DNA of 64,000 bases, from positions 1 through 64,000 of the forward strand of contig MQRK01243668.1 of assembly GCA_001938485.1 (NCBI GenBank), read 5' to 3'. The position numbers and the translations under genes are program-made. Shown here piece by piece: positions 275 to 57,900 of the stretch. The stretch is from Girardia tigrina (Eukaryota). Position 1 is the stretch's first letter. Each line of letters starts with the position of its first letter. The notes under the pieces are model-generated. The model did not search any database, was not told the DNA's origin, and saw only the letters and a list, made by a program, of their open reading frames with translations.

Positions 275-588
275 TACGGTTCCTTAGCAACCGTCACTAG
301 GGTGATCGCGACCGTTGCCGTGGAAACGGTAACCCCCCGTGGGACATCGCGGCCGTAACTGAGGTGATCGCGACCGTTTCCATGGTAACCGCGACCGTAA
401 CTAAGGTGATCGCGACCGTTGCTATGGTAACCGCGACCGTTGCNNNNNNNNNNNNNNNNNNNNNNATGGTAACCGCGACCGTTGCTATGGTAATCGGGTC
501 GGTTGCCATGGTAACCACGATAACCCATATCGTTGCTATGGTTACGGCTAGGGGGGGGGTGAGGGAGAATGCCCATTTTTACACTACT
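275..588. mobile_element. solo right terminus/TIR fragment of a Maverick/Polinton-related element
   Basis: Ends GGGAGAATGCCCATTTTTACACTACT (reverse complement AGTAGTGT-AAAAATGGGCATTCTCCC), matching the terminus at 35697. Shares the GGTGATCGCGACCGTTGCYATGGTAAC repeats seen at 42560-42800. Confidence 0.8.
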
Positions 589-2528
589 GGTTTTCAAATT
601 TTAATATTCATATAAGTTTTTTAAATTTTAAAGTAAGGTTTTTATAATATATTTGTGTCCAAAAAAATTAATATGATGAAATTTAAATTTAAATACACCT
701 TTTGATAAAATATTTATAAAAGTACTAAATATAAATTTATTTAAAGTTCTTATAATGAAATTGGATTTAAATAAATTAAAGTAAATTCTGAGGTTTTAAA
801 AGGAGCGTAAAAATATTAATAATAATTAAATAATAATAATTAATAATAAAATTAAATAGAATTAAATATAATTGAAAATATATCACAAACTTTAGAAAAA
901 AGCTAATAATAAATAAAGAAATAATAATTAAACACTAATAAAAAATATAATTAAAATAATAATAATATTATTATTACATTTTATAAAACCTGAAAATAAA
1001 TAAATTGAACACAACTAAAAAAAATTCAAATTAATTTTTTTATAACTATATATAACCATTTTTTAAATTTCTAAAATTTCTATATAAATTTTTATAAAAT
1101 TTCTTTTGTTAAAAAAAGTTTAGCCTAGTGAATTTTATTTATTTTTTATGAAGACGAAAACAATTATTTATATTTAATAAATAATATAAAAAAGGAACAC
1201 AAAATACAACAAAGTTTTTTAATATTTATAAGTTAGAAAATGTAAAACAATTAGTAAAGTAAAATAATTTTGTCTCTATTCATTTCGAAAAGATTTTTAC
1301 ACGAAAATATGTAGAAATATAAAAGACAATTTTCTGTTAATTGTAATTCCATTCATTACCAAAATTTCATTTCATCTAAATTTTTTTCGACACGAAATTA
1401 TTCATTAATTAAAATAAATTTAATAAAATATAAAGAAATAAATTTATTTAGTTATTAGCAAGAATTAAACCATTATATAAGTAAAAATAACACTAAGTAA
1501 AAGAAACATTTTTCAATATTTATACGCTAAAAATTTAGTAAAATACATATTCTTCCGAATTAAATAATTAACGAAAAATTATTTATTATCATAATTTTTG
1601 TAAAATAAAAATTTAGACTCCTAAAATACTTTTTAGGTTTAATTTTAATCACTGTAAAGTCATTCCGATTAAGTATATAATTAAAAACTAGGATTTAACA
1701 TAAAATTTTAATAATGAAATTGGTTTTTATAGACCAGACTTCAAGGTTGTTTGACTTTTTGTTTGTTTAACTGCATCAAATGAAGTTTTTATTTGTGATT
1801 TGTGATTGAAAAAGAATAAAGAATTTGAAATTTTTGTTTTATGAATTATTAATTTGAATTTGAAACTATTCCTGAATGTCAATACAAATTGTGGTGGATT
1901 TGATATCGATATTCATACAGAAAACATAGTTTCTTATTAAACAATCTAATGAACAAAATAATAAATTCCAAAATAGATTCGGTACATTGAAAGACAATTC
2001 CTCTTTGTAGTACAAAAAAAACAAAGACAAATAAAAATGTTCAAATATTTCATTACTAAGTACCAAGAGGTTATTTATCTACATGAATTTATCATACGAG
2101 AGATCGTAGACAGCAACCAGTATTGGGGTTTCATTATCGAGAATATTGCCTCTCAATCGAATTTGAAAATTGGTGATTTGAATAGATTGGTTGAAATTAG
2201 AATCGGCCGGAAGACAAAGATTCAGTTTTACTATACCGTTCCTTACGTACCACGTACTAAGTTAATTAATTTTCAACTATCAGATGAAATATATGACTTA
2301 AATGCGATATTCAATTATTTTTCCAATCAATGAGGTCAAATTTAAAAAATTATAAAAGACGAAGTCGAGAAATTCTTTAGTTTAATGAATTACGTTCAAT
2401 ATTTTCTCTTTTTAAATTTTGTGATGAAACATTAAAAAATATTCAAAATTCAAAAAGAATCATAATAATAAATCAAATTAATTATTTAATTTTTTTAATT
2501 AATGAAATACGAATGATAAATAATCATA

Positions 2529-8230: not shown

Positions 8231-8528
8231 GAAAAAAGATATCCTAAAAAGGGAGAAATATTATTGTTGATAAGATGGAAGTCTAATTCGGGAACAGAGA
8301 GAGCCAGATGCAAATATTTGACATGTCAGCGGTCTTGTTTCTATGGGGCATGTCTTGTTGCTCATCCCTTGTTTGTTTAATTGTTTTAATTAATTAAAAT
8401 TCGTGTGTTTTGTTAATGCTTATTTCTTTTACTTTTACTTTCTTCCCGTTAAAGTTTGTGATGAAAGATAAATTATTTAAACATTTCGTTTGACAGTCGA
8501 ATAAAGTTTGAATGTTTAAAATATATTT
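8231..8528 (+). repeat. second copy of the ~300-bp repeat
   Basis: Encodes RARCKYLTCQRSCFYGACLVAHP followed by the same AT-rich tail as 6691-6995. Confidence 0.55.
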
Positions 8529-22027: not shown

Positions 22028-22822
22028 ATGCTCATAACCGACAAATATCCTGTTTTCAAAGATCTACAAACGTCAACCAAAGGTCAAGTTTACACGTGTA
22101 AAAGAAAAGTTCTTTCGAAAAATAATAAATGCGATGAGATTGTTATAGTAAAAACATTTATTAAAACAAAAAAATCGTATTTTACTCAAAGTGATTCACA
22201 CACAAAAGATATACCGAAAGAGTTATATTTTAATAATATCATCAACGACGAAAGTATTTGTCCGAAAATATTGGAAATCTTTGAAACGAAAGACGAATAT
22301 GCGATTGTGATGGAATATCTCAATGGAGATTGGAGCGATTTATTTAGTTATACTGAAATAAAAAGAAGCGAAAAGACGTTAAAGAAGGTTTTTAAGAACA
22401 TTGTATTAGCACTAGATCAAGTGATGAGGAAAGGAATTTATCATTTGGATATGAAGCCGGAAAATGTGATGGTCAATGCTAAGACTTTGAACATAAAAAT
22501 TCTAGATTTTGAAGACGGTTTATTTGATGCGATTAATTTGTTTCCCAAATGTAATAAATTAGTAGGAACGAACGGCTTTATGAGTCCAGAAGTGAGTGGA
22601 GGACAGGAATATGATGTGAGGAAGAGTATGGTGTACTCCCTGGGTTGTCTGTTTTACAGTTGCATTGAATCAGCACATCCTCCAAAAGAGGGTACAGTCC
22701 AATTTACATATAGAAAATCAACAAAATCAGCTCAAAAGTTTATTAATGATTGTGTTCGAAAATCAGTAAAGAAACGACTAGAATTTGTGGATTTATTAAA
22801 TCATATTTATTTAGTAATATAA
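22028..22822 (+). CDS. intronless atypical Ser/Thr protein kinase (PIM/CAMK-like)
   Basis: Intact 264-aa ORF with VIVK, IVMEY, YHLDMKPEN, ILDFE, GTNGFMSPE, VYSLG and a C-terminal KRL...HIY. Confidence 0.85.
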   Translation: MLITDKYPVFKDLQTSTKGQVYTCKRKVLSKNNKCDEIVIVKTFIKTKKSYFTQSDSHTKDIPKELYFNNIINDESICPKILEIFETKDEYAIVMEYLNGDWSDLFSYTEIKRSEKTLKKVFKNIVLALDQVMRKGIYHLDMKPENVMVNAKTLNIKILDFEDGLFDAINLFPKCNKLVGTNGFMSPEVSGGQEYDVRKSMVYSLGCLFYSCIESAHPPKEGTVQFTYRKSTKSAQKFINDCVRKSVKKRLEFVDLLNHIYLVI

Positions 22823-29372: not shown

Positions 29373-29612
29373 AATTCAAGGATTCCAAACAAGTCGAAAA
29401 AACAACTCTTTATTTATTATACACCTTCTAAAAGGAAAATTAAAAAACTAACAAATTTAGGTTTTATTTCTGGATCTTTGTGGTGCTGAAAGATCCTGCA
29501 CCACAAAGATCCAGAAATAAAACTTAAATTTGTTAGTTTTTTTAATTTTCCTTTTAGAAGGTGTATAATAAATAAAGAGTTGTTTTTTCGACTTGTTTGG
29601 AATCCTTGAATT
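29373..29612. repeat. near-perfect palindrome (~114-bp arms, 11-nt loop)
   Basis: Arms 29373-29486 and 29498-29612 differ by one substitution and one indel. Confidence 0.95.
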
Positions 29613-34200: not shown

Positions 34201-35696
34201 TAAAAGACTGTTATAAAAAGACTAATATAAAATCGTTGAGGCCGAAATATATTATCAAAATAAATATATGATTAATATCATTATCCAAATTCTGTGGACG
34301 GAGATATGCCAGAAACCGCATATGTCGACCAGCAGCCTTAACTAGAATCGCCGTTACAAGTCTTACTAACTTATCAACATTAATAAACGTTTTACACCAC
34401 TCTTCTCCAACTATGTTCAGAATATGACCGATGCAAGTGACGTGAATAGATTTTATGAGAAACCGAGAGAAATCTCGAAGCGCCTTAACTCTAAGATTCT
34501 GTTATTCTAATCTGTATTCAAATAATGTCCTTAAATCCACATTCGATATTGTTGGTCCACAATATCCAGAAAGTTTTCTTATGATAGTAAAGGATAGTAA
34601 AAAAAGATAGTAAAGTATGAGAGTAATCAGATAGTAAATCCAAAAACTGAAACCGAGTTATTGTTAAATTCTTCAGTGATTTATTGTGTTTCTCAAATTA
34701 ATTAAAAATAAAAATAATTTTTAAAATTACAATTAAATTTTTAATAACAACGCCTAATTTTCTCAATTTCTTGTTTATATAACAATAAATTATATTAGAT
34801 TTTTATTTATTTAAATTTCCAACTTATTTGCTTTAAATTTCAAACATATTTCTTTATTATTAAAAAATTGGTGGAATAAATCTTTGATTTTATAAACTTT
34901 CATGTCCAAAAATTAATTAATTTTCAGGACTCAAAATCCCCACTCTCTTTGAAAAAAACCTTATTTTTTGGATTATAGGGACATAAACCGTATTTCACAG
35001 ACCCGGCTAACTGAATTAGAAATCAGTACAAAACTTTTCGTTTTAAAATTTTCTAAACGGATAAAATAGTTTTAGATTTATACATAATTCGACAAATAGA
35101 ATGCACAAATACACATGGAAAAATGCTTCTCTTAACTGGTCAGACATTTTGCTATCTGGTTTGGTTTGATCCGAAAACTCTTGACTTTTACACTCGAAAT
35201 CGCGATGAAATCGCTAAACATAGCTATCGATAATCAGTCAAACTCTAAAAATCAACATAGTCTAACCGATAATAAAACCTCTTTTCGAAAGGAACTCATA
35301 AAAAAAGAAATTATTATTCCATTCATTAAAACAAATTCAAAAGAGTAGTAATAGACAATTTTTTAATTCAATTTCTCTGAACCAAGTTTTCACATTCAAA
35401 TGAGTGACAATCACATATACATTCATCCAGACAAAACATGCTCAACGATTGTCGAAATCTAAATTCATTTATTTTAACATATATTCACACACACAACCAT
35501 TGAATACTAAATAAAGAGTGATAGAAACATAGACAAACACCCTTGTTCGATATTATCCAAACTTTGATAAATCCCTCTCATATCGGCCCTGACCGTGGAC
35601 ATATTTAAGGATTCAATTATGAAAAGCTTATCAAAGATTAAATTAAACATTTTTGTACAGAAAATCAATTGGGTAGAGATATCAGAATGATCGGAT

Positions 35697-36900
35697 AGTA
35701 GGGGGAAAATGGGCATTCTCCCCACAAAACCCACCGAAGGGCGTTACCCGTTACCATGGCAACGATTTCGGTTACCATAGAAACGGTTCAGACTCACTTG
35801 AAAACGCTTAACATTGGTTACCGGTACCCTAGCAACAGTAGCGATTACCAAAAAAACGCTTCTGATTGGTCAGTAATCCCATTGAAATTGTCGCGATCAC
35901 CATAACAACAGTTCCGAACAACATAGCCTAGGAAGCATCGGTTCCGATCACCCTAACAACGGTAACTAAGGTCTTAGTTACCATAGCAACGGTAACCAAG
36001 GGACATTTTCATTAAGAACGGATACAGTGATTCAATTCGGTTGTAACTATGGTAATGGTTACCGTATCCATAGCAACCGTAGAAAAAAGTTCTAATCGAT
36101 CACTGCACAGTGCAAATATTTGCTAATCGATAATGCACATTGTACCGAACATTTTTAATGTGCTAGCACAGTGCTTTTTAAGTTGCACATGTGCAAAAGT
36201 GTAAAAATCAATACATAAATTTTTTTTAAAAATGCTAGTGTCAAAAATCGATATCATGTGTTTGATGCACATTTTGATTCTATATCTGAATGTACAATTA
36301 TAAATTTCCTATATTAATTACTTTTTCCTATAATTAGCATAATGTGTATATTTACACAAAATGCACATTGATTTTAGAGGTACAAGGAAGCAGAATATCA
36401 AAAATATGCTGATGCATTTGAATAGAAACCCATATACGTACATTCAGATTCCATGTCAACATTTTCGAAAAACATTTCGAATATTTCTGAAATTCTCAAA
36501 AAAGTCCTTAAAAATCAATTTTTTCGTATATATATATGAAACCCATGTGTTATATGTATGTTATTTACCATCAAACAATACCACATGAATCACCTAATGT
36601 ACTCCATCAACAATCACAAGTACCTTTGTTACCATAACCAAGATAAATAACCATTTATCTTATATGTAAAAACTACATGTGTAAAACTCATATTATACTT
36701 AAAACGGGCATAGATATTATATATAACATCTATATAATCTGCTAAAGTACATGAACCGAGGCATCAACTATTAAAGAATCTTGATACATGACCTTATAAA
36801 AATCTATAATACACTTAAAACATGCATGGGCTTTCTTGACAACAAACATAACAACATGTCATTATTATGCATTCATCATGCATTTGTTATGCATTCATCA
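35697..36900 (+). repeat. left TIR (~1.2 kb) of the Maverick
   Basis: Reverse-complement match to ~41680-42848 throughout, e.g. GTGTCAAAAATCGATATCATGTGTTTGATGCACATTTTG. Inner boundary approximate. Confidence 0.9.
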
Positions 36901-37084
36901 TGGCAACATAATGCACAGTTGAAAATTTTATATCTTATATCTTAAATATTTTGATATTATATATTTTATATGTCATATTTTATATGTTATATATAATAAA
37001 AGTTATTCTTTATATGGTTTTGAAGGTAGACATGTATGACATGATTTTTATGACAAACATTTATGTAGATGACATTTCAGATAA

Positions 37085-37136
<52 letters not shown>

Positions 37137-37689
37137 ATATATACAAGGTTTTGAATGAAGATATATATTCAGAACCATAAATTTTAAACACAACATAAAT
37201 AGTTACAAAAGTCATTGAATATGTATACAAATTGATAGTTTTCAACAAACAACTGAACAGGATAATAAATCTGAAATGTCACATTGGTCAGATATCAGTC
37301 TTTGACATGTTTTCTTCAATATCAGGTTTAGTTCTGATTCGGGCGCCATTTGTTGCATCTCTATTTTACGAACGTTTTCTAGGAGGTCCGTCGTTATGTT
37401 TTTTATGACCTAGATTCATCTCTTCTAATCTCTCGGCCATCATAGAATATATCGAAGAGATCGACTGTTGGAGCGTTTCTATCATCGGTGGGAATGGTTG
37501 GATTTTCCGATTGATATTCGGTGTTGATGAGGGAGGGAACAATAATAAACCTTCCATGAATTCACAGTTGATTGCCGACATTGCGTTCAGTGTCTACGGT
37601 AAGGTTAGTTTTTATGAATAATAAATAATTTTTTACCTGAATATTTATCATTAATTTTATTGCTGCCCTGAGCTCCTCATACCTGATGA

Positions 37690-40600
37690 TGCAAAGAATT
37701 TAGCTGGATTCACATTGGATACATTTTTCCAGCATGAGGTACATGTTATAATCTTTCAGGATTTGAAACCTTATGTCTGTATATTTCAACATTGCTGCAA
37801 ATTCATACCTCGTGATGTAAATAAATGAGCTGGATTCAACTTGTGGCTCTTAAATGTCACATCCCGAAAGCTCTCAAAGACATCCGTAAGAAGCAGCACA
37901 TCTATTTGGAGATATACATCACTATATTCCCCAAGTTTTTGGCATTTGAAAGCTTGACAGAGATTTTGTGCATGTTGATAATCAGCATCACTAAAGCCGG
38001 TGTCATTAAGCTTGTTGTAAAATGCCTCTTTTACTGGCAATGTTGTTTCATCCATCTATCTCCATGATGTTATGTAGTAATAGGGGAATGCTCCTTTCCT
38101 TTTGACCAAGTCAAATGTATTTCGGAAGAACTTTTTAGTTTCCTTCAGTTCATCTACTGGAAGATTCTAGACAAGGCTGTCTAGCAATGATGACATAAAC
38201 CGAAAACTATCGATGAATCGTAGCTTAATTCTGCCAACATGCTTGGTAAATGTGATATATTTTTCCTTACTATTTGGAATAACATCTATATTCCCTTCGA
38301 TTTTTCCCAGTTCTCTTACTATGAAATGGGAGTCATATCCACTAAGATTGTGGAATACAACAGGAATATTTGTAGATGTTTTACATCTTAAATTGCAGTT
38401 ATTACATGCTGCTCCTCGATATTTTTCTGTAAAATGACAATGGTCTTTGACTTTGTGATTGTCATCTGTGAATGGCTTTTCACACATGTAACATTGTGTT
38501 GCCTTTCTCAATTCACATTTTTCTTGCCATGTCATCTCCATATCTACCTTGTGTTGTTGCAATATGTCTTCAATTGTGTGGTCATAAGTCTCCATACGTT
38601 GCATAAAATGTTTCGCTGCATCTGGACCTCTGTATAGGAATGGCTCCTTGTGAATACCCAATACAGTGTGATGATAGCTCATGATATTAGTATGCTGTTG
38701 TAATGCTAAGTTATGGATACGGATTGTGTTTGATTTAAAAAGGGGGCGCTGTAATAAAGCTCAAAACAAAGTACCAAAAATGAAAAACTGAAAGAAATCG
38801 GAGCATCTTCATCGATCATTCCTAACGACAACCGAATTCGACCGATAACTCGCTTCTGCGAACGATCAACAAATTTCTATCGGAAAATGGACATAATTTT
38901 CCAGTTTATTCATGCCAAAAGATTTGTACTCAAAGAAATTGAAAGAGTTCAAATAAATTTGTCAAAATTTCAATGTCAGAATTTGGCATTTTCTACGAAT
39001 TCTTGAGTAAAGGAAAAAAAAGAAAACAGAAAAAATAATCAAATTTTATTCTGATGTAGAAACACCAAATTGACTTAACAAATGATTGAAGAAAAAATAA
39101 CATTTACATGATGTTTGATAAATGTAAAAAAATAATTACTTGTTATAATTAATTGTTGTTGGGTTTGGGAGAAAAATTGGAAATAATTATTGTGATTATT
39201 TTATTAGAAAAAAAATGTAAATTTCCGATTGTTAAAAATCGGTTTTTTTGTACAGTGATTACTTTTTTTAATGAAATTATATTTGCATGTAAAAAATTAA
39301 TTATGATAAAATCGATTTGTTTAAATCGATCAGTGATGATGTTTACTGTCGCGGAAATTGTGATCGATATCAATAAATAAATATTGAGATTATTTTTCTT
39401 GATATTCAAAAATTTCATCGATATGTCAGTTCCGAACGTTATTTATAACGTTAATGTAAAATCCAAATTCAAATTGTTCTTCAATGACGAATTATGTGAA
39501 ACGGGACCCAACGAATTAGTAAAAAAATCAACGAAGATAAAAAACGAAAAGAAGTCGCCCAAAAAGAGGCGAATGTCATCAAACAAAAGGAAATTCTTTT
39601 GTTCCGAAGTTATATCGCATTGCAAAACTATCGAGTTCCAATCGATGAGATCGATCCATCGAACTCGTCCACAGAATTATCGACTGTGAGATTATTGGCG
39701 GTATAAGATAGAAATGNNNNNNNNNNNNNNNNNNNNNNNNNNNNNNNNNNNNNNNNNNNNNNNNNNNNNNNNNNNNNNNNNNNNNNNNNNNNNNNNNNNN
39801 NNNNNNNNNNNNNNNNNNNNNNNNNNNNNNNNNNNNNNNNNNNACAATATATGATAATGGGAACTTTCTGCATCTTTTCATATTCTTTGAATTCGATATA
39901 ATCTTCCTTGGGAAATTCCGCTCTGATGCAATGATTGTTATTGCAATAGGCCTTGTGCTCTTTCAACTTTATTGCTGCATCATCTCCATTAAAATGTGTA
40001 AAGCATCGTTTACAAATCTCGATACTTCCATGATGTTTCGATATTTGGGATCTTAGAAGGCGCTCAAAGTTCTTGATCCATATAAAATGCTTCTTTTCTC
40101 CATCATCTAGCAATAGCAAATCCCGATGATCTTCTAATTCTTCCTTACATACAAGTAAGGAATAAAATGTTTCATTCTCCAAACCAAAGATATTGATTGA
40201 AACATTGTTGTGACTTGCAAATTTAGTGACTTCTTCCAGGCTCGGTGGGAATTTTATACAGTTGAAGTCATATGGGTACTGCAGATTGTTGTATATCCAT
40301 ACTAGTGATGCATGCTTTTGATCCTCAACAAATTTTGACATTATTTCATACTTGAAGCACATGTTGTCATCATGTGGACATACATGCCTTTTTCTTGACT
40401 ATCTATTCAGGAAGCGGAATGTAGAAGCTGCCTCTCATTGATGAACATGGATAATCATGATGCATGGATATCATGGATAATCATGATATTTACAGATGCC
40501 AGAGTCCATCAACTCTTCTTCTCCTAGCTCTCATCAGCTTCCTTTATTATATTGGTTTTTTCTTCATTGAGCCACTCTCAAATATCATTGGATTCTAACA

Positions 40601-41362
40601 TTGGTCTATTTTTGGTCTTGAAGGCTCTATTTGACAGTTCATTATCGATATTGATATATATAGCTTTAATAGGTTGACTTTAATAGCCTTTAGTTCAATC
40701 ATGCTGTCTTGTAGAATTTCCATGGTTTCCTTCTTGGAATATTCCAGAAACTCGTGAAGACTTGTAACCCTGCTGCCTAGGCTGTCTTGGCTATCCTGCC
40801 GAGCCTTGATAATATATTGACGTACCTTCTTATTCAATAAAACTTTATGAATTGGTCTTTGTCTTGAACCTTTTGATGGAACATTTATAATATTTGTATA
40901 ATTTACATGTTTTGATGGAATATTTGCAGCCTTGGATGTATTTGAAACAGGTATTTCCATTGGAACATTTGTAGCATTTACATATTTTAAGGGAAATTTT
41001 TCCGTATTTGAAACATTCTTCTCAATTGGGGCATTTGACACATTCTTCTCAATTAGTTCAATTGAAGCATTTAGTGGTGTGAGAACTGGATACGCTGATG
41101 ATTGGAAGATAGTCTTCTTGGACTTCACTGAAAAGGCGCACAAATGGTCCTCGTGACATTCACAAAATTGATGATAGTCACCACTACTTGCATTTTGACA
41201 AAATGGACATATATAATATTCACATCTATTGCATGCATGACTAAAGTAGCACCACATTGTATCATGACAATTTCGTGGATTGTAAACATTTGCCATGCAG
41301 CATATGTATAACGAACATTGTTCAATTTTCGTAGGAATTTTCTCTATAATAATCTTTGACAT
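37690..41362 (-). pseudogene. protein-primed family B DNA polymerase (pPolB), N-terminal/exonuclease part, fragmented
   Basis: Motifs in order: GSFYIPLP..KKA..CFKY, NNVSINIFG, HFIWIKNFERL, KVPIIIY, KVKDHCHFT..YRGAACNNCNL, FHNLSGYDSHF, FIDSFRFM..L..L, KRKGAFPY, Y...Y...DVLLL.DVFE.FR, LNPAH. Catalytic palm motifs are absent. Confidence 0.9.
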
Positions 41363-41679
41363 ATTTTTTTGAGTATATTCTTTTTCGATTTGGTAAAAGG
41401 AAGTAGATGTTGTTTATGGTCATTGTAAAATTCTTCAAAACTAGTTCTGTACACTGCATCAAATGTTGGACATATAAAATATTCTTGTGAATAGAAATTG
41501 TACATGTAGTATTGGGATAAATTTGAATTCTAAAAAAAAAATAATTTATGTACGGAGCGAAAAAAAACTCACCATTTTGTAAATAAGATTTTAAAATAAT
41601 GACAAAGGTATTTTTAGGAAATTGATATATTGATTAAAATTCAAATTTGAAATTCAAATTTCGTTTACATAATGAATGC

Positions 41680-42848
41680 AATTCTTTGACGTGATGATTG
41701 CATAAACAATGCATGATGAATGCAATATGTTGACATGAAGGATGTATGACGATATCACCTTGGATACGGTCAACTTGTGGTCTATAAAGCCCATGCATTT
41801 TTAGGTATACTATATTTAGGTATACTACTAGGCTCATGTACTTTAGCAGATTATATAAATGTTATATATAATGTCTATTCCCGTTTTAAGTATAATATGA
41901 GTTTCACACATGTAGTTTTTACATATAAGATAAAAGGTTATTTATCTTGGTTATGGTAACCAACGTACTTGTGATTGTTGATGGAATACATTAGGCGATC
42001 CATGAGGTATTGTTTGATGGTAAATAACATTCATATAACACATGGGTTTCTTATATATACGAAAAAATTCATTTTTAAGCACTTTTTTGAGAATTTCAGA
42101 AATATTCGAAATGATTTTCGAAAATATTGACATGGAATCTGAATGTACGTATATGTGTTGATATTCTGCTTCCTTGTACCTCTAAAATCGATGTGCGTTT
42201 TATGTACATATACACATAATGCTAATTATTGGAAAAAGTAATCAATATATGAAATTTATAATTGAACATTCGGATATAGAATCAAAATGTGCATCAAACA
42301 CATGATATCGATTTTTGACACTAGCATTTTTAAAAAAAATTTATGTATTGATTTTTACACTTTTGCACATGTGCAGCTTAAAAAGCACTGTGCTAGCACA
42401 TTAAAAATGTGCGGCATGATGTGCACTATCGATTAGCAAAGTTTTGCACTGTTCAGTGATTGATTAGCATTTTTTTCTACGGTCGCTATGGATACGGTAA
42501 CCATTACCATAGTTACAACCGAATTGAATCACTGTATCCGTTCTTAATGAAAATGTCCCTTGGTTACCGTTGCTATGGTAACTAAGATCTTAGTTACCGT
42601 TGTTAGGGTGATCGGAACCGATGCTAAGGTGATCGGAACCGTTGCTGCCTAGGCTATGTTGTTCGGAACTGTTGTTATGGTGATTTCGACCGTTGCCATG
42701 GTGATCGCGACAGTTTCAATGGGATTACTGACCAATCAGAAGCGTTTTTGGGTAATCGCTACCGTTGCTATGTTAAACGGAACCGTTTCCATGGTAATGG
42801 ATGACCCTCCGTGGGGACTTGTGGGGAGAACGGCCATTTTCCCGTACT
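41680..42848 (-). repeat. right TIR of the Maverick
   Basis: Inverted match to 35697-36900. Inner boundary approximate. Confidence 0.9.
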
Positions 42849-45040
42849 TCGGATAAAATTGAAGAAGGAATTTTGAACGCTGGGATGTTTGGATGCTCTA
42901 ATGTATTATGATTTATATATTTTATTTGTTCATTTAATATATATTTTCAAAAAACTTATAAAATTATCATTATTTTATTTAGAAAAACATCTCTCTTTCC
43001 TTATTCAAAGACGATTCAAATCAACGTTTATTTAAAGGACATTTGCCTGAAATATTTATTGTTTGTATATAAAAATAAAAATATGATATAAATTAAAAAA
43101 ATAAATAATGTTTAAAATAAAAATTAAAATAAAATAATTAAATATTGTTCCTTTTTAAAATAATCAAATTTGTGACTCATCAAGTTAATATTTCAGGTCC
43201 TTGTGTATATTGATTGAATTATTTTTGTTGACTAATAAGCGAATGAAATGGCTCACTCTAATTGGTCGACCAATCACGAAGAGGCTTGGACCAGACTTAT
43301 TTTTGAAATTATGCTACTTATTAATTTACAATTTAATTTTTTTGAATTATTTAATTAAAAATTTGTTGATGTTTTGATTGGAATTTTGCTGAACTTTTTT
43401 TGCAATTTTGTCGAGCATTTGATTTGAAATTTTTTCCATAATTGAACTGAAATTTTGTTGGAAGTTAATTGTTTGAGTTTTTAGTCGAACATAAATTTGA
43501 TTTCTGAAATTTGTTGAACAGTAATTATTTTAAAATTTTGTTCAACCCTAAGTGCTAATTTTTTGAAATTTTATCAAACTTTAAAAGAATATCCGCATTA
43601 AAACGTCCCTGTGTCCAAATGTCCCGTATCCGAACATTAAGTACCGGATAAAATATTGAATAGATTGTACATTGTGGTAGCAAGAAGGATCATGACATAA
43701 AAGTCAGGATCGATCTGTTTGAGTTTAAGGTGCAATAATAGTCATAAATCGCATCAATGAATTTTTTGTAATAATGGCTGAAATAATTTTAATAAATATT
43801 GATTGTTTTAATAAGTCAATTTACTAAAAATATGGTTAAAGAATGAAACATGGTTTCATCTTTGGATAATAATAATTTTTACTTTTTAACTTTTACCGTC
43901 GATTATTTCTGATGGTAGTTCTGAAGGTCTTAGTGACGATAATACAAAATGCGGCAATACATGTTCACAACCCATGTTATTGTGTCTGAGTTATTAGTAT
44001 TATAATTATTATATTTGAATAAATACAAACCCGGTACTGACTGGAAACAGAAAACTGAATTGTCGAAATTTATTCAAAAAGACTTCGTAAATAAAAATTG
44101 CGAAAGATTAGAGAAGCAGAACCTGGATGGAAAGGTACCGAAAGAATAAGAGTTTGCTGCAAATTTTATGAAGATCATGTTTAATGATAATACTAGCGCA
44201 ATTGTATGGATACTGTCACTTATATCAAATAAATGTCTTTTCAGTCAAAAATATCTTTGGTCTCAATAACATCGAAAAAAATAAATACCTTAATGTAACA
44301 TTCTTCTTACTTAAAGAAAATTTTGATGAGGACTGACCCATTGAAAAATATCAATAAAATTTATATTCTAAAACCCCAATAGTTAAATTTATTAATAAAA
44401 TTCAAATAAGAAACCAGAATTTTCTTTTGCTTCATATTTTTTAATTACTTATATATAAATCTGTCCGTGTTAAAAGAGAGTAAAAATATTTGTAAAACAA
44501 TAAATAAATAAGACGAAAGATAAATATGTGTCAGAAATTGTTTCAGATGTATCACGGATGAGAGAGAATCTCTCCTTCATTTTGTGAAACGATATTTGTT
44601 GATTTCTTTTGACTTTATATAATTAAAATAACATTTAAGAATATTTTCAGTGTCTATCGAGAAGAATTATTTCCAGCTATCGCACTTAAAAATAATTTAT
44701 GTCCCTCCTCTTCGGTACTGCGAGCGGATAGCGATAATTCGGCAGCAGAAGAGATTGATATTTTTGCGTATCTTCTTTCAAGTTGAACATTTCCATACAG
44801 TTTTCATATGTTTCGTCACACATTTGGCAATTATTTGTCTTGTTGACACTTAAATTATTTCTATTATATCGCTTTTTTTTGAAATTGAAAATAATTAAAA
44901 ATTTTAAAATAATAAATTTTGAAAAAAATGATAAATATTATTTATTAATTTTTTAATAATAAAAAAATATAAAATTAAATTNNNNNNNNNNNNNNNNNNN
45001 NNNNNNNNNNNNNNNNNNNNNNNNNNNNNNNNNNNAAAAA

Positions 45041-49200: not shown

Positions 49201-49889
49201 AAAGGTGAACAGGAAGATTGGGTGATATTGGGTAAAATAACAACAGGACCCAGAGACACGCCATGAATAACCGAGCGTTACGGCCACGTAATATTTACCA
49301 TGTTTAAAAAATTTGAGTTTTATGTAAAAAATGCTTTTCGAATAAAGAATTATTTTACAATACTCATATTTTATTGTGATTTGAAAAACGTTAATAAAAA
49401 AATTATTATTTAATACTTAAAAGTTGCTAAATTTTAAAATGTTGCTTTATTTAATAGCTACATAATATATACATCCTTTACATCGCAATCTTTTGTTTAT
49501 CTGAAAAAAAAGAATAATTTTTTAAAGTAAGAGCCTTTTCGAAAAAGTACAGAGACTCTTTGTCTTTTTGATTTATCTAAAACAAGTTTAATTTAGTTAA
49601 AATAATCTATAAATAAATGAAAGGAACTAAATTTAAAAAAAACATTAAGTAATATTAAAAATATTAATGTTAACCCATTATAACACAGCGTTCCTGTAGA
49701 GACCACAATTTATTAATTTAATTTTAACAATCAAAACTTAATAACAAAAAAATGTGTAAAAAATGCGAAATTTAATTTTTAAAAACAATGGAGTGAATCG
49801 ACAACATTAGAATAGAAAAAAATATCAGAAATTAATTTTAAAAAAAGCATTAATTAAATTAATATCAAAACTTGAAAGCCAATTGAAAA

Positions 49890-49930
49890 CATTTATTAAT
49901 TTCGACGGTTTAACCGTCATCATCAGAACA
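49890..49930 (-). ncRNA. minimal hammerhead ribozyme, inverted pLTR copy
   Basis: Minus strand reads GTT-CTGATGA-T-GACGGTTAAACCGTC-GAAA-TTAA-TA-AAT. Confidence 0.75.
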
Positions 49931-50412
49931 AATGATTTTTCAAACGAAATTTACTTATATAGTGCAGTTAGATAATTGCGTTAGATAATGCAATAAGTTT
50001 AAAAGTAATATCCCGTACCCAGAAAATTGAAAGAATGTTCGGCAATAAATCTCCAACGCCATTGGGATTGTGTTCGGATCTCATTTACCAATATACATAT
50101 AATTGGTATAACGCCACATACATTGTCACGTCATCTCTGTAAGAGAATCCAGGAACACAGTCGCAATGAAGGTGGAAGTAACATTGCAGGACATAGAAGA
50201 CATTGTAAAGGAGATATAACTTCACAACACTTTAAAATTCTGTGCACTGTGACATGTGAAGCGTTATATATTAGATCTTTGGATCCTAAAATTAACGTTC
50301 AAACTGCACTCTCTACAACTTTGTTGAGAGTTTTTAAATGATGTACTGATTACGTATTGATTGCATAATCATTAACTGCACTATATANGTAAATTTCGTT
50401 TGAAAAATCATT

Positions 50413-50453
50413 TGTTCTGACGATGACGGTTAAACCGTCGAAATTAATAAACG
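50413..50453 (+). ncRNA. minimal type I hammerhead ribozyme in Penelope pLTR
   Basis: GTT-CTGACGA-T-GACGGT(TAA)ACCGTC-GAAA-TTAA-TA-AAC: conserved core, stem II, palindromic stem III, and stem I GTT/AAC. Confidence 0.8.
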
Positions 50454-50669
50454 TTTTCAATTGGCTTTCAAGTTTTGATTTTAATAACTTGCCAATTTTA
50501 TTTCAATTTATTCACAATTAAATTAATGTTGTTTTAATAATTGTAATAATTTTTAAATTTATTTTGAAATAAATTTTTTTTTGTGCTGAATGCGTTTTCA
50601 ATTTCTCATCGCTAAATTTTCGATAAAAAACTGATTTTTATTTCTCGACCGACGTAAATTATCCTCTGA

Positions 50670-51913: not shown

Positions 51914-54900
51914 TTGTCGATTTCATGTCCAATTCCTATTGAAAATATATTAACTCCTAAAGATTTCAAGTCATTCGAAAACTGTTTGGGTTCAGGTCCG
52001 ATTGTATTGTGACCATCTGTTATCAGAAGAATATTAAATGGAACTTCCAATCTTCTTTGGGGATATAATTTCTGTAGAGTTGCATTTAAAGCAACACCAA
52101 TTGCTCTTTCAGATCCAAACTTTTGCATCTCATCAATAAGAAAAAGTTGCTCTAAAATTATGATCCTATGTAAACAAATTGAATAAATCATTCTTCTATT
52201 CTTACCATCAGAATTTGTTAGAAAAGTATAATCTATTTTTATTTCCTCAGAAAATCTAATAAAAGATATTCGGATTCCGTTATCTTTTTCAGTAAGTTCA
52301 TATATTAAATCACCCAAGAATACTTTCGCAATTTGAAATCCAGTTCGATTTACTGAGTCGGAAGAGTCAAGAAGAATCACAAGGTCTTGCTTTGATTCTA
52401 AGCATTCACTGTATCTCTCTTTCTCTATAATAAACTATTTATTTCAAAAAACTTTGTTTTAAATATATTTATTTATATAAATATTTAAATTTGAAATTTT
52501 TATTTATGGAAAACTTTTTTTACTCTTACATGTCATAATATTAGGGTTCCATGACAATTCGAAACACGACAATTCAATACAAGACAAATCGACACATTTT
52601 TATCATCTGAAACTAATTTATTCAAATTCAGATATAATATTCAAACTTTTAATTTATTATGATTATTAAAAACACCAACATGGGTTTTCGAACTTTTATT
52701 TTCAATACAATCAGAATTGTCTTTTGGACAACTCTCAGCAAAGCTTTCGTAATTCGACATCGTTCTAAATTGATAATTTTTAGTTAATGTTTTTCAATAA
52801 ACAACTATTCAAACAAATTTTTCATTATTTTCAGATTTTATTTTTAAAGTTCAATTTTGTTATTTTAGTAATAATTTTATCTACATATTAATTTTATTTA
52901 AAAAAGGATTTTATTTAAAGAAGAACATTTATTTAATGGATAGACTTTTCCTTTGAAAACGTGGATCTTAGTTTCTCTTCACAAGTTTCACCTGCCGCTG
53001 CTTCATATTTTAAATTTAATACATTTGGATGTTGAATTCATAACGGAACAAATCGATAAAACAATATGTTTGGTGTCCATTGCAATCATAAATATCAAGG
53101 GTGAGGAACTGATCAATGTATTCACCACGCTTAGACAGAAAATTATATGCACAGGATAAAGACATCACGACATTACAGAGCCGATAATGAGAAAACAGAG
53201 GGACGAGTATGAAGTTATCGAAAAGGTTCAGCAACTGTGTTACGGAAAAATTTTAGTGGGACATGACCTCCAACTAGAATTAAAAGCATTAAATATAAAT
53301 AAAAAAAGATTATTAAGAATTAGGGAATTATCTACGACGAGAACATTATATGAAATGGGTCAACAACCCAAAGCAGGTGGTACACTCTTCAAGCTTCAAA
53401 CATTAGCAAAGAATATCCTCAAGAGAAATATTCAAATTCCGGGACGCCACAACGCTTTGGAGGATGCTATAGCGATCAAGGATATCTACAAGGAAATCGC
53501 GCCAAATTATATCGATCAAAAGATTTGGAAATCCATGGAAGTAGACACCCAAAAAAGAAAAACAGTTCCGGATTGTAGAATTGTGATCAATGAAAAAAGG
53601 AGAAAAAGAAATCTTGAAGAAGAGTTAAAAATCTTGGAGTCAAATTTGGATCCATTGGTGGATCCCGTGGTGGAATTATTGGAAGAAGAAGATTTAATGG
53701 CGACGCTGACGGAGGAAATTTACGGTCAAGAAGAAGAGATAAAATCATCACGGGAAGAAGAAAAGGAGAATACTCAAGCGAATTTATTAATCAATGTTGG
53801 CACTCAAACCCATCGAAGAAAACACTCTGAGCGCGTGACTCAAACTTCAACGCCAACGTTGACCGAACAACGGATACAAGTCGCAAGCATAACTCCACAG
53901 AATCAAATAGAGGTAATGGGGAAAATTTACTACCTGGAGGCGTTGATTTATCGAGCGGAGACAGGGGAGAGATTGCTTCTGGATGGACTTGGAGTTTAGT
54001 TAATAAACTTTAATAACTTTTAGTTAATAATCTTTAGTTAATAAAAATTTTCATGTATTTTCAATTTGTGTTATTTATTTTTAATGAGTTTGGGTTGATT
54101 GATTTTGCATGAGCAGATAAGCCATGATTTGACGCGTGTAACATTCGTACTATTAGAGTTTTCTTTCTTGATTTTTTTTTCAACTTTTCTAAAATAACCC
54201 CTTCATTTAGTGGTTGTGATGTTACTTAATTTATGCTATGTTGTTATTACTGTAACAGATTTTTTCGTTACTCTAGTTTTATAAATAGTATATAGTTTTA
54301 TTATATTTGTAATATCATTTTTAATATCATTTTTAAATAAAATCTTATGTTTGAAGAAGGATATATAAGTTTGTTTTATACTATTTGAAAAGTAATTAGT
54401 TATTAAAAAGCTGAATGAATACCGTCGTTGCATTTTGTTCCTAATTTCGTTGACAGATCCAAAACAAGACAAGTGTCAGCAACTTTTTTAAAATTTGTGT
54501 TTGCAAGTACGACGGTTCCATTTTGACAATAATTCCCTCCTAAAACGTTTTCAGGACATTCTATAAAATCATCATTCCAAGTTCAAAATTTAAAATATAA
54601 TACCAAAATCATTTGTACAACCAGTTGATTTAATTGTTTTACGTTGTTCTGTACATTTTCCATCCAAATATTTATATTCTATTAGGATTGTATCTCTTCT
54701 GTTGTTTACGCACTTTTCATTTATGATGACATTTGATTTTACACATTTGAAGGCTGAAAAAATAAACATTAGCCACATTTATTCAAAACGGAAGAATGAT
54801 TTAACTTTTCTTAGAACAAATGTCTGATTTTACATTTTCCTCGATGTTTTTCAACTCTTCCGTTCCTTTTATTTCAATAATCGTATTCAAAGATGAAATC

Positions 54901-57900
54901 TCTTTCAACTGAGTTCTAAATATCTCATATACATTCTTTAAAATACATTCTGCGAACATGCAGAAATATTTTTTAAAAATCATAAAATCATTCAGTCAAA
55001 CAATATTCACTTTGCTCCGTTCATCTTTAACTCAACACTTTTAAAATAGTCATGTCAAGCAACTACCTTTCGTATTCTTGATGAGATCTTTACAATCAAA
55101 TATATCGTTATTGTTAAATCGATTATTTTATTATTGATAAATGGAAGCCCATGAACAGGGCACGTAATAATTATTCAATGTTATTTTGTCCAAAATATCT
55201 CTACAGATTGAAGAGTAAAAGAAATGATATTTTATATTTCATACTACCGTATGAATGTTAATGTAAAACTGTCAGAAGAATTCAAAGTTTTCACCAAGCA
55301 ATCAAAAGCAGGTCATAAGTCTCTTAGAAATTTGAAACACATTGTACTGAATTAAAATTTAGGTATTATTATCTATTTATATTTTATTATCAGTATTTAT
55401 ATTTCAAATATCCTCCTGTCAAAGACAATTCAATTATATCAGAAACTTTGCTTATACATTTATTGCCTTTTTTATATATATGATAAGTGCATATTTTTTT
55501 ACGATATTAATGATTTTAATGAATGTACTGATGATTTACAAAAAGTTGAAATAAAGAAGGAAGCAGTTGCAGTATCAAAAAATTCCCGATGTAGATATAA
55601 ATGCTAATTTAATAAGTAAAAGTGTGTCAAAAAGAAGTAAAAAGTTTCGTACTAAGGTAATAAAAAATGAATTATTGAAAGATGACAACATTGATGATGG
55701 AAAAAATCTAAATCTAATTCGAAATTTTGGTGGTTATCATTAATAATGATTTTATTTTTATGTATATCCCCATCAATGTCTTTAGTAGTGTATGATTGTT
55801 CACAAACAAAAGTGGGCAAAATATATTCTTTAATGGATGTCGTAGAATGTGCTGAAGCTTACATTATCCATTACAAATTAAAGAAGAGAAAAATGTTTTA
55901 TATCATTTGTATCAAGAATCAGGATTTAGAAAAAAAGTACAAGAGTAAAAAGTGCAAGTAAAAGTACAAGAGTGTATAGTCAAACGTGCAACTTATGTTT
56001 TTCATTGTGGAAAATGAAGTCACTCTTCCCTTATTAAAATAGATGCTATACCAAGTCCTGCTGATATTCTACCAGAAAATTGTGAAGCAGCATTTCAAAC
56101 GAAACAACTAAAAATTGATTCCACTTTAATTTTAACTGCCAAAGTTGGATACATCACAAGAGAATCTGTATTTCGAAAAGGAGTCATGGATCCGAATGGA
56201 GAATGCAAAGAAGAATCTGTAAAATTAGGAAATAAAATAGTAGATAAAATCATGGTATCAGATGAATATCAAACAGAATTGAGAGAATTTGAAGGAATTT
56301 TTGATGATGTTACAGGGAAATTACAGTCCCTTCCATTTTGTAATTATGGAACTACAAGCTGTCAAACAGGAGAATCTGTATTATTATACTCAGTTAATTA
56401 TAAAGATTGTAATTTGGCATTTCTTAAATCGACAGAATTTATTGAAGCTCAAGACATTCAAATACAAGAAAGACCAGATATGTTAAAACCGAAGAAGCAT
56501 CAAGCTCGAAAAGCAGTACCAGTTCAAAAAAAATAATTTAGCAACAGTTTTAATGTCATCTCTTTCAGCAGATGGAATGAGATTTATTCGAAAAGAAAAA
56601 GAAAACCGTTGTGGAAAACCAATGTATTCAACAAATTACAAGGGTCTATATGTTTCTCAAGAAAAGATATCTGATGCTGCAGTTGTACATAATGTTGATA
56701 TAAAATTATCTCATTATTTGAGCAATAAAATGGATTTTGCATTTCATTTTCATCAATCAACGGTGGAAAATTTATATCGTGAGGTTATATTAAATGATTG
56801 TAAATTGAACCGAGAAATATTACAATATTTAATCGCTTTAGTAGTACCAAATCCTAATTTAGTCGCTCCAATATTAGTCGCTGAAAAAGGTTTATTTGGA
56901 CGAATCATGGGCGAAGCATTGTATAGTTATAAATGTAAAGAAATATCAGTTCAAATAATAAAATATAAAGAGTGTACAAATGAACTTCCGGTTAGTTATA
57001 AAGGTGAACTAAGATTTGTAGAACCTATAACATGAATTCTGGTGGAAAATCGAATAAGACCTAGAAAATTACAATGCAATGAGTGTAAATAGAGACCTCT
57101 CGGACAATCTTGCATTCCCAAATGGCATTAGAGTGTCGGATTTAGAAATCGAAATACATTTACGAGTTTTAACCCACATGGAACCAGTGGTACTAAGCGA
57201 AATATTTAAAATGAATGGTCAGGGAAATTGGAATTACATGTTGTTATATAAAAAGGTCCAACAACTGTGTTACGGAAAAATTCTAGTGGGACATGACCTC
57301 CAACTAGAATTAAAAGCATTAAATATAAATAAAAAAGATTATTAAGAATTAGGGATTTATCTGCGACGAGAAAATTATATGAAATGGGTCAACAACACAA
57401 AGCAGGTGGTACACTCTTCAAGCTTCAAACATTAGCAAATAATATCCTCAAGAGAAATATTCAAATTCAGGGAAGCTACAACGCTTTGGAGGATGCTATA
57501 ATGATCAAGGATATCTACAAGGAAATCGAGCAAAATTATATCGATCACAAGTATTAGGTTCGTGATTGAAATCAGAATTCATAATTTTGTAAACTTTATT
57601 TATACTACAATTTTCATTATTGAAACAAATTTATGATGAACTATTTCATAATCCAGATCTAAAAATTCTAAATATACATAATAATATCGATAAATATATA
57701 AATATGTTATTTTATTCAATTTTACATAAATTTAGATCTTTAAAAATATTTTAAAAATTCAATTTAAACATAGTGATTATTAATAATTTAAACTGTAAAT
57801 TTAAACTATAAATTTAAATTCTATTTAATAAAACATTTTATTTGTTTTTAACAAAAATTTGCAAAAACAATTTACAACTTTAAGATACAATTAACAAATT

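What the first reader, a model, noticed from the sequence alone, without database searches (positions are those of the whole stretch)
35697..42848. Maverick TIRs carry clustered RFX X-boxes and a CCAAT box: possible hijack of the ciliary/spermatogenic program
Seen in the left TIR: GTTACCATGGCAAC (35750), GTTACCATAGAAAC (35771), GTTACCATAGCAAC (35977), GTATCCATAGCAAC (36064) and ATTGG (35865). Seen in the right TIR: GTCGCTATGGATAC (42482), GTTGCTATGGTAAC (42569), GTTGCCATGGTGAT (42692), GTTTCCATGGTAAT (42785) and CCAAT (42732). I did not notice such motifs elsewhere in the window except at 275-588. Known: RFX factors drive ciliated-cell and sperm genes, and adenoviral termini recruit host factors for protein-primed replication. 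Inference: this virus-like transposon uses host RFX (with or without NF-Y) as a germline or ciliated-cell enhancer or as an origin accessory. I know of no description of this.
Basis: partly seen in the sequence, partly recalled or inferred. Interest (0 to 1): 0.85.

Follow-up and report, generated by a model that had tools for sequence, protein, structure and literature searches.

The report
X-box-like repeats in transposon ends
A dead, cut-down virus-like transposon carries at both ends arrays of a 21-base repeat whose core looks exactly like the binding site of the host RFX factors, which is real and non-random, but sequence alone cannot show that the host factor is used.

Summary
All the quoted motifs are at the quoted coordinates. 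Six sites meet the published X-box consensus (GTNRCC N0-3 RGYAAC) strictly, all with an AT spacer. That is 8 strand hits against 0.04 expected, and all lie in three element termini: 35697-36077, 42482-42848 and 275-597. They are not independent sites. Each is the 14-base core of a 21-base unit repeated about 8-10 times per terminus, starting 43-47 bases from each tip. The rest of the unit is equally over-represented. Conservation across units is not mirror-symmetric and is no higher at RFX-critical positions. The CCAAT pentamer is at chance level and absent from the third terminus.

The element (7,152 bp, 6-base target duplication, ~1.2-kb inverted repeats, AGT-type tips) is an internally deleted Maverick/Polinton derivative. 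It keeps only a truncated, stop-ridden protein-primed polymerase gene. The assembly gap lies in that gene and does not touch the motifs.

Best reading (0.4): a protein-binding repeat array of the element end, with host RFX the leading candidate binder, working as enhancer or origin helper. Rivals are an element-encoded binder (0.3) and a neutral minisatellite (0.2). The ciliary/sperm and NF-Y parts are unsupported. I left out comparing relatives' ends and referred that step.

The parts
35691..35696 (.). Left copy of the 6-base target-site duplication (TCGGAT)
   Evidence: Read directly; identical hexamer at 42849-42854.
35697..42848 (.). Whole element, 7,152 bp: internally deleted Maverick/Polinton-type derivative
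   Evidence: The bounds are set by the duplication and the inverted repeats. The tips read AGTAGG... and ...CGTACT, close to the (AGT)2//(ACT)2 end motif reported for vertebrate Mavericks (PMC8097293).
35697..36915 (+). Left terminal inverted repeat (~1.2 kb)
   Evidence: Inverted-repeat pairs I1-I7. The arms are about 95% identical over aligned pairs, with three 21-nt indels in the outer array.
41677..42848 (-). Right terminal inverted repeat (~1.2 kb); it lies upstream of the minus-strand polymerase remnant
35697..35742 (+). Left terminal block (~46 bp), which holds a conserved 17-nt core at 35706-35722
   Evidence: The 17-mer is identical at 563-579 and has 2 mismatches at 42824-42840. There are 4 hits against 0.13 expected.
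35743..36077 (-). Left array of about 8 in-register 21-base units with an X-box-like core. Strict X-box matches at 35750 and 35977. The ATTGG is at 35865-35869.
42482..42805 (+). Right array of about 9-10 in-register 21-base units. Strict X-box match at 42569. The CCAAT is at 42732-42736.
42806..42848 (+). Right terminal block (~43 bp)
36100..36370 (.). Inner part of the left repeat with a second over-represented motif class (TGCACA / ATGTGC / CACATG hexamers, 22-42 fold). Its mirror lies at about 42285-42450. 11/22-base ATGCAT-type repeats lie at 36855-36915.
37679..41362 (-). [quoted passage not shown] It has an N-terminal region, an Endonuclease_7-like zinc module and the start of the exonuclease/DNA_pol_B_2 domain. 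The polymerase catalytic part is absent.
   Evidence: Pfam: Endonuclease_7 E 3e-6, DNA_pol_B_2 E 3e-6. There are 8,059 relatives, with full-length ones of 1,100-1,300 aa. tblastn outer bounds are 37679-40763, covering roughly residues 60-850 of the relatives. Break counts are: 2-7 in-frame stops, 0-2 frame changes, 377-540 C-terminal residues of full-length relatives missing, and one ~1-kb stretch without homology.
39717..39843 (.). Assembly gap (127 N, length estimated) inside the polymerase remnant; not filled
42849..42854 (.). Right copy of the 6-base target-site duplication (TCGGAT)
275..597 (+). Third terminus (right-end orientation) of the same or a sister family. It has a regular array of about 10-12 units of 21 bases (278-552, with an assembly gap at 444-465), then a terminal block ending in ...ACTACT. 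Strict X-box matches at 418, 502 and 532. There is no CCAAT.

Best explanation
The locus is a dead, internally deleted Maverick/Polinton-type element. Each end follows a fixed plan that a third terminus in the window shares. A terminal block of about 45 bp carries a conserved 17-nt core. It is followed by a GC-rich array of about 8-10 copies of a 21-base unit, which is two turns of the DNA helix.

I read the array as a set of iterated protein-binding sites of the element's end, inherited from active parents. This much is shown: the array is repeated, phased, confined to termini, placed at a fixed distance from the tip, and kept GC-rich in a 28% GC genome.

The leading candidate for the binder is a host RFX-family protein. 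This is inferred: six sites meet the strict consensus with the preferred AT spacer, and most units keep a monomer-type first half-site.

The likely role is also inferred, by analogy with adenovirus inverted-repeat origins with host-factor sites, the SV40 21-bp repeats, and RFX on the AAV inverted repeat. The array would act as a terminal enhancer for inward transcription of the end-proximal genes, as an auxiliary element of the protein-primed origin, or both. Here the right repeat is the whole upstream region of the polymerase gene.

In this copy the array is a relic. Nothing ties it to cilia, sperm or NF-Y.
For: - Strict consensus matches: 8 strand hits against 0.04 expected, all in termini. 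With up to one mismatch: 22 against 0.97.
- All six strict sites have spacer AT, and five fit the 'ideal' pattern.
- The 21-base period comes from TRF. In-register units are listed: 31 hits at 14/21 or better, all in termini.
- The first unit starts 43-47 bp from each of the three tips.
- Half-site columns average about 1.3 bits against 0.8 for the linker.
- The first half-site fits the monomer consensus 6/6 in 11 units and 5/6 in 13 of the 26 units.
- The outer repeat is 43-55% GC against 28% for the window.
- The third terminus aligns with the element's ends only through the units and the terminal block.
- The RFX DNA-binding specificity is conserved across animals and fungi (PMC10530576).
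- RFX1/RFX3 bind the AAV inverted terminal repeat, and RFX proteins act on enhancers of several DNA viruses (PMC5760533).
- The host is an animal.
Against: - The non-X-box part of the unit (second half-site plus linker) is just as over-represented: 13 hits against 0.09 expected. The repeated entity is therefore 21 bases, not the 14-mer.
- Conservation is not mirror-symmetric. Columns 1 and 3 are 100% and 85% conserved, while their mirror columns 14 and 12 are 50% and 54%.
- From, the mean top-base share is about 80% at consensus-fixed positions and about 83% at free positions. Variation is therefore not shaped as RFX binding would predict.
- A second unit subtype, whose second half departs from the half-site consensus at two positions, is kept in both the element and the third terminus.
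- The arms differ by whole-unit indels, as in any unstable minisatellite.
- Natural RFX targets usually carry one or a few X-boxes, not arrays.
- Only three termini from one genome were compared, and two of them are arms of one element.
Confidence: 0.4

Rival explanations
1. The 21-base units are binding sites for a protein encoded by intact members of the family. This would work like the subterminal repeats bound by transposases, or like the arrays of palindromic sites bound by viral origin or maintenance proteins. One candidate is the Endonuclease_7/HNH-like zinc module fused to the polymerase. Another is one of the uncharacterised Maverick proteins. The likeness to the X-box would then be coincidence or convergence.
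For: - The whole 21-base unit, linker included, is conserved and over-represented.
- Conservation is directional rather than two-fold symmetric.
- Two unit subtypes alternate in the third terminus, giving a 42-base higher order.
- The array starts at a fixed distance from the tip.
- Arrays of 8-12 phased sites are typical of element-encoded end-binding proteins (established knowledge of DNA transposons and viral origins).
- The polymerase and 30 of 40 relatives carry an Endonuclease_7-like module.
Against: - No such DNA-binding protein is known for Mavericks, and none is encoded in this copy.
- A chance fit to a roughly 19-bit host consensus, AT spacer included, in six sites is unlikely.
- Nuclear virus-like elements that depend on host RNA polymerase II need host factor sites somewhere, and the inverted repeats are the main non-coding DNA.
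Confidence: 0.3
2. The arrays are a neutral minisatellite that arose by tandem duplication of a short palindromic stretch in the inverted repeat of one ancestor. They are carried along without function, and the X-box likeness is an accident.
For: - The arms differ by three whole-unit (21-nt) indels.
- Units within the third terminus are nearly identical to each other, as after recent expansion or homogenisation.
- RFX-critical positions are no better kept than the others.
- Other short tandem repeats also sit in the inverted repeats.
Against: - The same unit, the same distance from the tip and the same two subtypes occur in two differently organised termini.
- The array stays 43-55% GC in a 28% GC genome.
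- The half-site columns are better kept than the linker.
- The fit to a specific host-factor consensus is very close.
Confidence: 0.2
3. The element plugs into the ciliary or spermatogenic RFX programme, together with NF-Y at the CCAAT box, to be expressed in germline or ciliated cells.
For: The X-box fit is as described above. RFX factors control ciliary genes in animals (PMC10530576, PMC2375033).
Against: - CCAAT is at chance level (142 against 166 expected) and is absent from the third terminus.
- RFX sites in known DNA viruses are used outside cilia biology (PMC5760533).
- The nearest polymerase relatives come from insects. [quoted passage not shown] Such a programme would be somatic.
- The arrays lie about 1.1-1.45 kb from the first open stretch of the only gene left.
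Confidence: 0.1

Closest known systems
Maverick / Polinton self-synthesising transposons (animal members also called adintoviruses)
   Same: It has a protein-primed family B polymerase gene and long terminal inverted repeats (1.2 kb, inside the reported 46-1,447 bp and 100-1,500 bp ranges). It has a perfect 6-base target duplication. Its tips are AGT-type: the third terminus ends in exactly (ACT)2 and the element's tips are one or two bases off. Sources: PMC8097293, PMC10748475.
   Different: It is 7.15 kb instead of 13-25 kb. It has no integrase, capsid, ATPase or protease genes. The polymerase lacks its catalytic part and is interrupted. It is a deletion derivative, not a Polinton by the definition 'polymerase plus integrase' (PMC5499653).
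[quoted passage not shown]
   Same: A host RFX-type site sits inside the inverted terminal repeat of a virus-like DNA element.
   Different: In AAV it is a single site, shown by binding assays. Here there is an array of 8-10 phased units per end, with no binding data, in an invertebrate element with protein-primed replication.
Adenovirus inverted-terminal-repeat origin with host-factor auxiliary sites
   Same: A protein-primed polymerase; a short reiteration at the very tip; a conserved terminal core followed by further sites within the inverted repeat.
   Different: No sequence or protein comparison with an adenovirus was made here (barred). The sites here are iterated many times and would bind a different factor family.
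SV40 21-bp repeats next to the origin (established knowledge)
   Same: Tandem 21-base units, each carrying host transcription-factor sites, placed beside a viral origin and serving both transcription and replication.
   Different: A different factor, a different virus class, and three copies rather than 8-12. This is an analogy only.
Subterminal repeats of cut-and-paste DNA transposons and iterated palindromic sites of viral maintenance origins (established knowledge)
   Same: Phased arrays of short, partly palindromic units just inside the termini, bound by an element-encoded protein.
   Different: No element-encoded binder is known or visible here, and the core fits a host-factor consensus.

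Membership tests
Maverick / Polinton | [quoted passage not shown] | tested here: met
   Pfam DNA_pol_B_2 and Endonuclease_7. There are 8,059 relatives, 98 of them at E<=1e-30. Only about residues 60-850 of the 1,100-1,300-aa relatives are present, and the remnant is broken.
Maverick / Polinton | Retrovirus-like (RVE) integrase gene | tested here: not met
   No Pfam hit in any ORF of 50 aa or more in the element. It is absent from this copy, so the copy is filed as a derivative, not as a Polinton proper.
Maverick / Polinton | Capsid, packaging ATPase and protease genes; size 13-25 kb | tested here: not met
   None found. The element is 7,152 bp.
Maverick / Polinton | Long terminal inverted repeats (100-1,500 bp) | tested here: met
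   Arms of about 1.2 kb, about 95% identical over aligned pairs.
Maverick / Polinton | 6-base target-site duplication | tested here: met
   TCGGAT at 35691-35696 and 42849-42854.
Maverick / Polinton | (AG)3//(CT)3 or (AGT)2//(ACT)2 end motif | tested here: met
   The third terminus ends in ACTACT. The element's tips are AGTAGG and CGTACT, which is near but not exact. The motif definition is from PMC8097293.
RFX X-box | Fit to GTNRCC N0-3 RGYAAC | tested here: met
   Six sites, all with a 2-nt AT spacer, against 0.04 expected.
RFX X-box | Constraint pattern of a two-fold symmetric dimer site (critical outer positions kept on both halves) | tested here: not met
   Columns 1 and 3 are 100% and 85% conserved, against 50% and 54% for mirror columns 14 and 12. 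Fixed positions are no better kept than free ones. The sample is small and not independent.
RFX X-box | Conservation of the site across species or copies beyond its flanks | tested here: inconclusive
   Within the window the core is better kept than the linker (1.3 against 0.8 bits), but the linker is also strongly repeated. The cross-taxon comparison was left out (see referred steps).
RFX X-box | Binding by an RFX protein; RFX-dependent expression | not testable with these tools
   No binding or expression data are available.
NF-Y CCAAT box | CCAAT present beyond chance and shared by related termini | tested here: not met
   142 in the window against 166 expected. One per arm, which is the same site mirrored. 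None in the third terminus.
Protein-primed replication origin with accessory sites | Short reiteration at the tip, conserved terminal core, adjacent accessory sites | tested here: inconclusive
   The tip reiteration and the 17-nt core are shared by the termini, and the array starts 43-47 bp from the tip. Origin function itself is not testable here.

The most novel reading that the evidence does not exclude
An insect-type Maverick family builds its ends from phased arrays of genuine RFX sites. Host RFX proteins would coat the inverted repeats and serve as the element's enhancer, as the accessory factor of its protein-primed origin, or both. This would be the first host-factor module defined for Maverick/Polinton termini. 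It would tie the element's activity to RFX-expressing cells.
Probability: 0.3. Interest if true: 0.7.

Novelty: new variant of a known kind. Interest (0 to 1): 0.45.

Why it matters
Almost nothing is known about how Mavericks/Polintons are transcribed or how their protein-primed replication starts in animal nuclei. Their inverted repeats are treated as mere boundaries.

This window shows a reproducible terminal plan: tip reiteration, a 17-nt core, then a phased 21-base array with a host-factor-like core. That plan gives a concrete, checkable hypothesis for the cis-acting module. It can be tested with existing assemblies, expression atlases and chromatin maps.

If the binder is RFX, it would extend the known use of RFX by DNA viruses (AAV and viral enhancers) to an ancient class of virus-like transposons. 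If not, the unit still marks the recognition site of an unknown end-binding protein.

In the paper library I searched, none of the papers listed by two searches joins Maverick/Polinton with RFX or X-box.

Tried and rejected
- Host identification did not get beyond 'animal'. An exact look-up of a kinase ORF found nothing. A homology search with the same ORF found nothing at E<=1e-20. Only two lines remain: a true Slo1/BK exon and insect sources for the nearest polymerase relatives. 'Insect or other arthropod' is therefore an inference.
- There are no tRNA genes and no Rfam family in the window.
- Pfam on every ORF of 50 aa or more in the element found nothing beyond the polymerase N-terminus.
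- No solved structure matches the polymerase piece by sequence.
- Pfam on 40 long relatives shows no integrase fusion and no RFX-type DNA-binding domain. That gives no support for an element-borne RFX-like protein, and no context either.
- I rejected the idea that 275-597 is part of the same element. It is a separate terminus with a different array organisation, abutting a mariner fragment.
- I rejected CCAAT/NF-Y.
- I did not attempt a spliced or frame-joined model of the polymerase, a reading across the gap, or any consensus of units or copies. For units I give only per-column shares, without bases.
Full report
**1. The gap, tested first**

The window has an assembly gap at 39717-39843 (127 N). 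It lies inside the minus-strand polymerase remnant, about 2-3 kb from the inner edge of either inverted repeat and from the motifs in question.

I compared 19 relatives of the polymerase with the window. No aligned piece spans the gap. For 17 of the 18 relatives that match on both sides, a homology block runs up to the gap's right edge. The next block starts about 1.0-1.1 kb to the left of the gap, and only 20-58 residues of those relatives lie between the two blocks.

The pieces on either side are in one frame as the letters stand. Because the gap length is only estimated, this says nothing. Continuity and frame across the gap cannot be established. A second gap (444-465) sits inside the array of the third terminus, so the unit count there is a minimum.

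**2. The observation**

I took the X-box consensus from papers, not from memory.
- PMC10530576: GTNRCC N0-3 RGYAAC, monomer GTTRCY.
- 10.1101/2021.02.03.429678: the 'ideal' pattern has G and T at positions 1 and 3 of the 5' half, spacer AT, and A and C at positions 4 and 6 of the 3' half.

Strict matches occur at six sites: 418, 502, 532, 35750, 35977 and 42569. That is 8 strand hits against 0.04 expected, and none of 100 shuffles came near. All six have a 2-nt AT spacer. Five fit the 'ideal' pattern in at least one orientation.

With up to one mismatch there are 22 strand hits against 0.97 expected. Only one, at 58965, lies outside the three termini. Three more are one mismatch off and two are two mismatches off.

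CCAAT is a different matter. There are 142 in the window against 166 expected.

**3. What carries the motifs**

It is flanked by an identical hexamer, TCGGAT, at 35691-35696 and 42849-42854. Its arms are about 1.2 kb long: 35697-36915 and 41677-42848. They are about 95% identical over aligned pairs. The tips read AGTAGG... and ...CGTACT.

The third terminus at 275-597 ends in ACTACT, which is the (ACT)2 end motif reported, together with perfect 6-bp duplications, for vertebrate Mavericks (PMC8097293).

Inside the element, the only recognisable coding sequence is on the minus strand. It is a protein-primed family B polymerase with an Endonuclease_7-like zinc module just before the exonuclease domain. 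It has thousands of relatives, and the full-length ones are 1,100-1,300 residues long. The nearest relatives that carry a source name are from insects: Ephemera, Diabrotica, Halyomorpha and Lycorma.

Only about residues 60-850 of those relatives are represented (outer bounds 37679-40763). Measured against the 19 relatives, the remnant has the following damage:
- 2-7 in-frame stops;
- 0-2 frame changes;
- loss of the C-terminal 377-540 residues of full-length relatives, which is the polymerase catalytic part;
- one stretch of about 1 kb without homology, which also holds the gap.

No integrase, capsid, ATPase or protease signature exists in any ORF of 50 aa or more. So this is a non-autonomous, decayed deletion derivative of a Maverick/Polinton-type element. 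It is not a Polinton by the definition 'polymerase plus integrase' (PMC5499653) or by size (13-25 kb, PMC10748475).

**4. Anatomy of the ends**

All three termini share one plan.

First comes a terminal block of 43-47 bp. It contains a 17-nt core that is identical at 563-579 and 35706-35722, with two mismatches at 42824-42840.

Then comes an array of 21-base units. TRF reports a period of 21. In-register units are listed, where all 31 hits at 14/21 identity or better lie in the termini. There are about 8 units in the left arm, 9-10 in the right arm, and at least 10 in the third terminus.

The array region is 43-45% GC in the element and 55% in the third terminus, against 28% for the window. 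There is no CpG depletion.

The third terminus aligns with the element's ends only through the units and the terminal block. It is therefore a differently organised end of the same or a sister family.

The two arms of the element differ by three 21-nt indels, which are gains or losses of whole units.

The inner part of the repeats carries a second over-represented motif class (TGCACA, ATGTGC and CACATG hexamers, 22-42 fold) and 11/22-base repeats.

**5. Are the X-boxes the thing that is conserved?**

Only partly. Over 26 in-register units, the half-site columns average about 1.3 bits and the 7-base linker 0.8 bits. This favours the core. Three observations go the other way.

First, the second half-site plus linker, taken as it stands at 301-313, is as over-represented as the X-box. 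It gives 13 hits at up to 2 mismatches against 0.09 expected, with three perfect copies. The repeated entity is the 21-mer.

Second, conservation is not mirror-symmetric. Columns 1 and 3 are 100% and 85% conserved, while their mirror partners, columns 14 and 12, are 50% and 54%. From the same table, the mean top-base share is about 80% at positions the consensus fixes and about 83% at positions it leaves free.

Third, a second unit subtype, whose second half departs from the half-site consensus at two positions, is kept in both the element and the third terminus. In the third terminus it alternates with the X-box-like subtype.

The sample is small and not independent. Two of the three termini are arms of one element, and the units arise by duplication. 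These are therefore indications, not tests.

**6. Mechanism**

These points are shown:
- a phased, terminus-specific, GC-rich array at a fixed distance from the tip;
- the array is present in two differently organised termini;
- its core fits the RFX consensus far better than chance.

These points are inferred:
- The array is a set of protein-binding sites of active family members.
- The binder is most likely host RFX. The specificity of the RFX DNA-binding domain is conserved across animals and fungi (PMC10530576). The host is an animal, because the window holds a single exon that matches the Slo1/BK channel at E 5e-89.
- The array serves as a terminal enhancer, an origin accessory, or both.

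The right repeat is the entire upstream region of the polymerase gene, and the array lies about 1.1-1.45 kb from its first open stretch.

Precedents are RFX1/RFX3 on the AAV inverted terminal repeat and RFX on enhancers of several DNA viruses (PMC5760533). From established knowledge there are also host-factor sites in adenovirus inverted repeats and the SV40 21-bp repeats.

I put this reading at 0.4, an element-encoded binder at 0.3 and a neutral minisatellite at 0.2.

- CCAAT is noise.
- RFX use by viruses is not cilia-specific.
- If the host is an insect, the dRFX programme is that of somatic sensory neurons. Three dRFX target reporters were expressed there and not in spermatozoa (PMC2375033).

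**7. Comparison with what is known, and novelty**

The element itself is an ordinary decayed Maverick derivative. The terminal plan with an X-box-like iteron is not described in the library I could search. Among the papers listed by two searches, none that mentions Maverick or Polinton also mentions RFX or X-box.

I rate it a new variant of a known kind: host-factor-like site arrays in the terminal repeats of virus-like DNA elements. Interest is 0.45. The pattern is clean and testable, but the function is untested, the copy is dead, and part of the evidence points away from RFX as the selective constraint.

Noticed in passing
window 56186-57035 (+), with inverted repeats at 52664-52937 / 61032-61314: A 160-aa ORF matches Pfam Monjiviricetes_fusion (a viral fusion glycoprotein, E 7e-23). 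This is an endogenous viral glycoprotein fragment, lying between a pair of 90-130-nt inverted repeats about 8.4 kb apart. Nearby are a weak exonuclease-like ORF (53187-53999) and a weak GIY-YIG hit (59794-60198).
   Followed up: partly
window 1-274 (+) and 63017-63861 (-): There are Tc1/mariner remains. A Mos1-type HTH_48 fragment abuts the third terminus, and a DDE_3 transposase ORF has an HTH-like piece upstream of it.
   Followed up: partly
polymerase remnant, window 37679-41362 (-), and 40 relatives (alignment A2): An Endonuclease_7/HNH-like zinc module sits directly before the exonuclease domain, here and in 30 of 40 long relatives. Invariant Cys/His columns appear. An HNH domain in a Polinton polymerase has been described as a synapomorphy of nematode and oomycete pPolB2 (PMC10748475). 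Whether the insect-type module is the same insertion was not tested.
   Followed up: partly
window 36100-36370 and 42285-42450; 36855-36915 and 41662-41738: The inner parts of the inverted repeats carry a second family of short, partly palindromic motifs (TGCACA, ATGTGC and CACATG, 22-42 fold over background). They also carry 11/22-base ATGCAT-type tandem repeats. Their meaning is unknown.
   Followed up: partly
window 3534-4727 (-): A single 397-codon exon encodes residues ~40-418 of a Slo1/BK potassium channel (E 5e-89 to Drosophila slowpoke). It is the best evidence that the host is an animal.
   Followed up: partly
window 6731-6914 / 8304-8487; 29373-29447 / 29538-29612; 49858-49970 / 50373-50485; 60673-60765 / 60781-60873: There are further inverted-repeat pairs, 93-100% complementary. 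They are probably small non-autonomous DNA transposons or hairpins. I did not examine them.
   Followed up: no
whole window: The CpG observed/expected ratio is about 1.16 at 28% GC. The host DNA therefore shows no CpG depletion, and neither do the GC-rich arrays.
   Followed up: no
window 22028-22822 (+): A 264-aa ORF holds a complete protein kinase domain (Pfam E 1.5e-33). It found no relative at E<=1e-20 in the word-indexed protein search and is not on record as a gene product. The host genome seems absent from those collections.
   Followed up: partly
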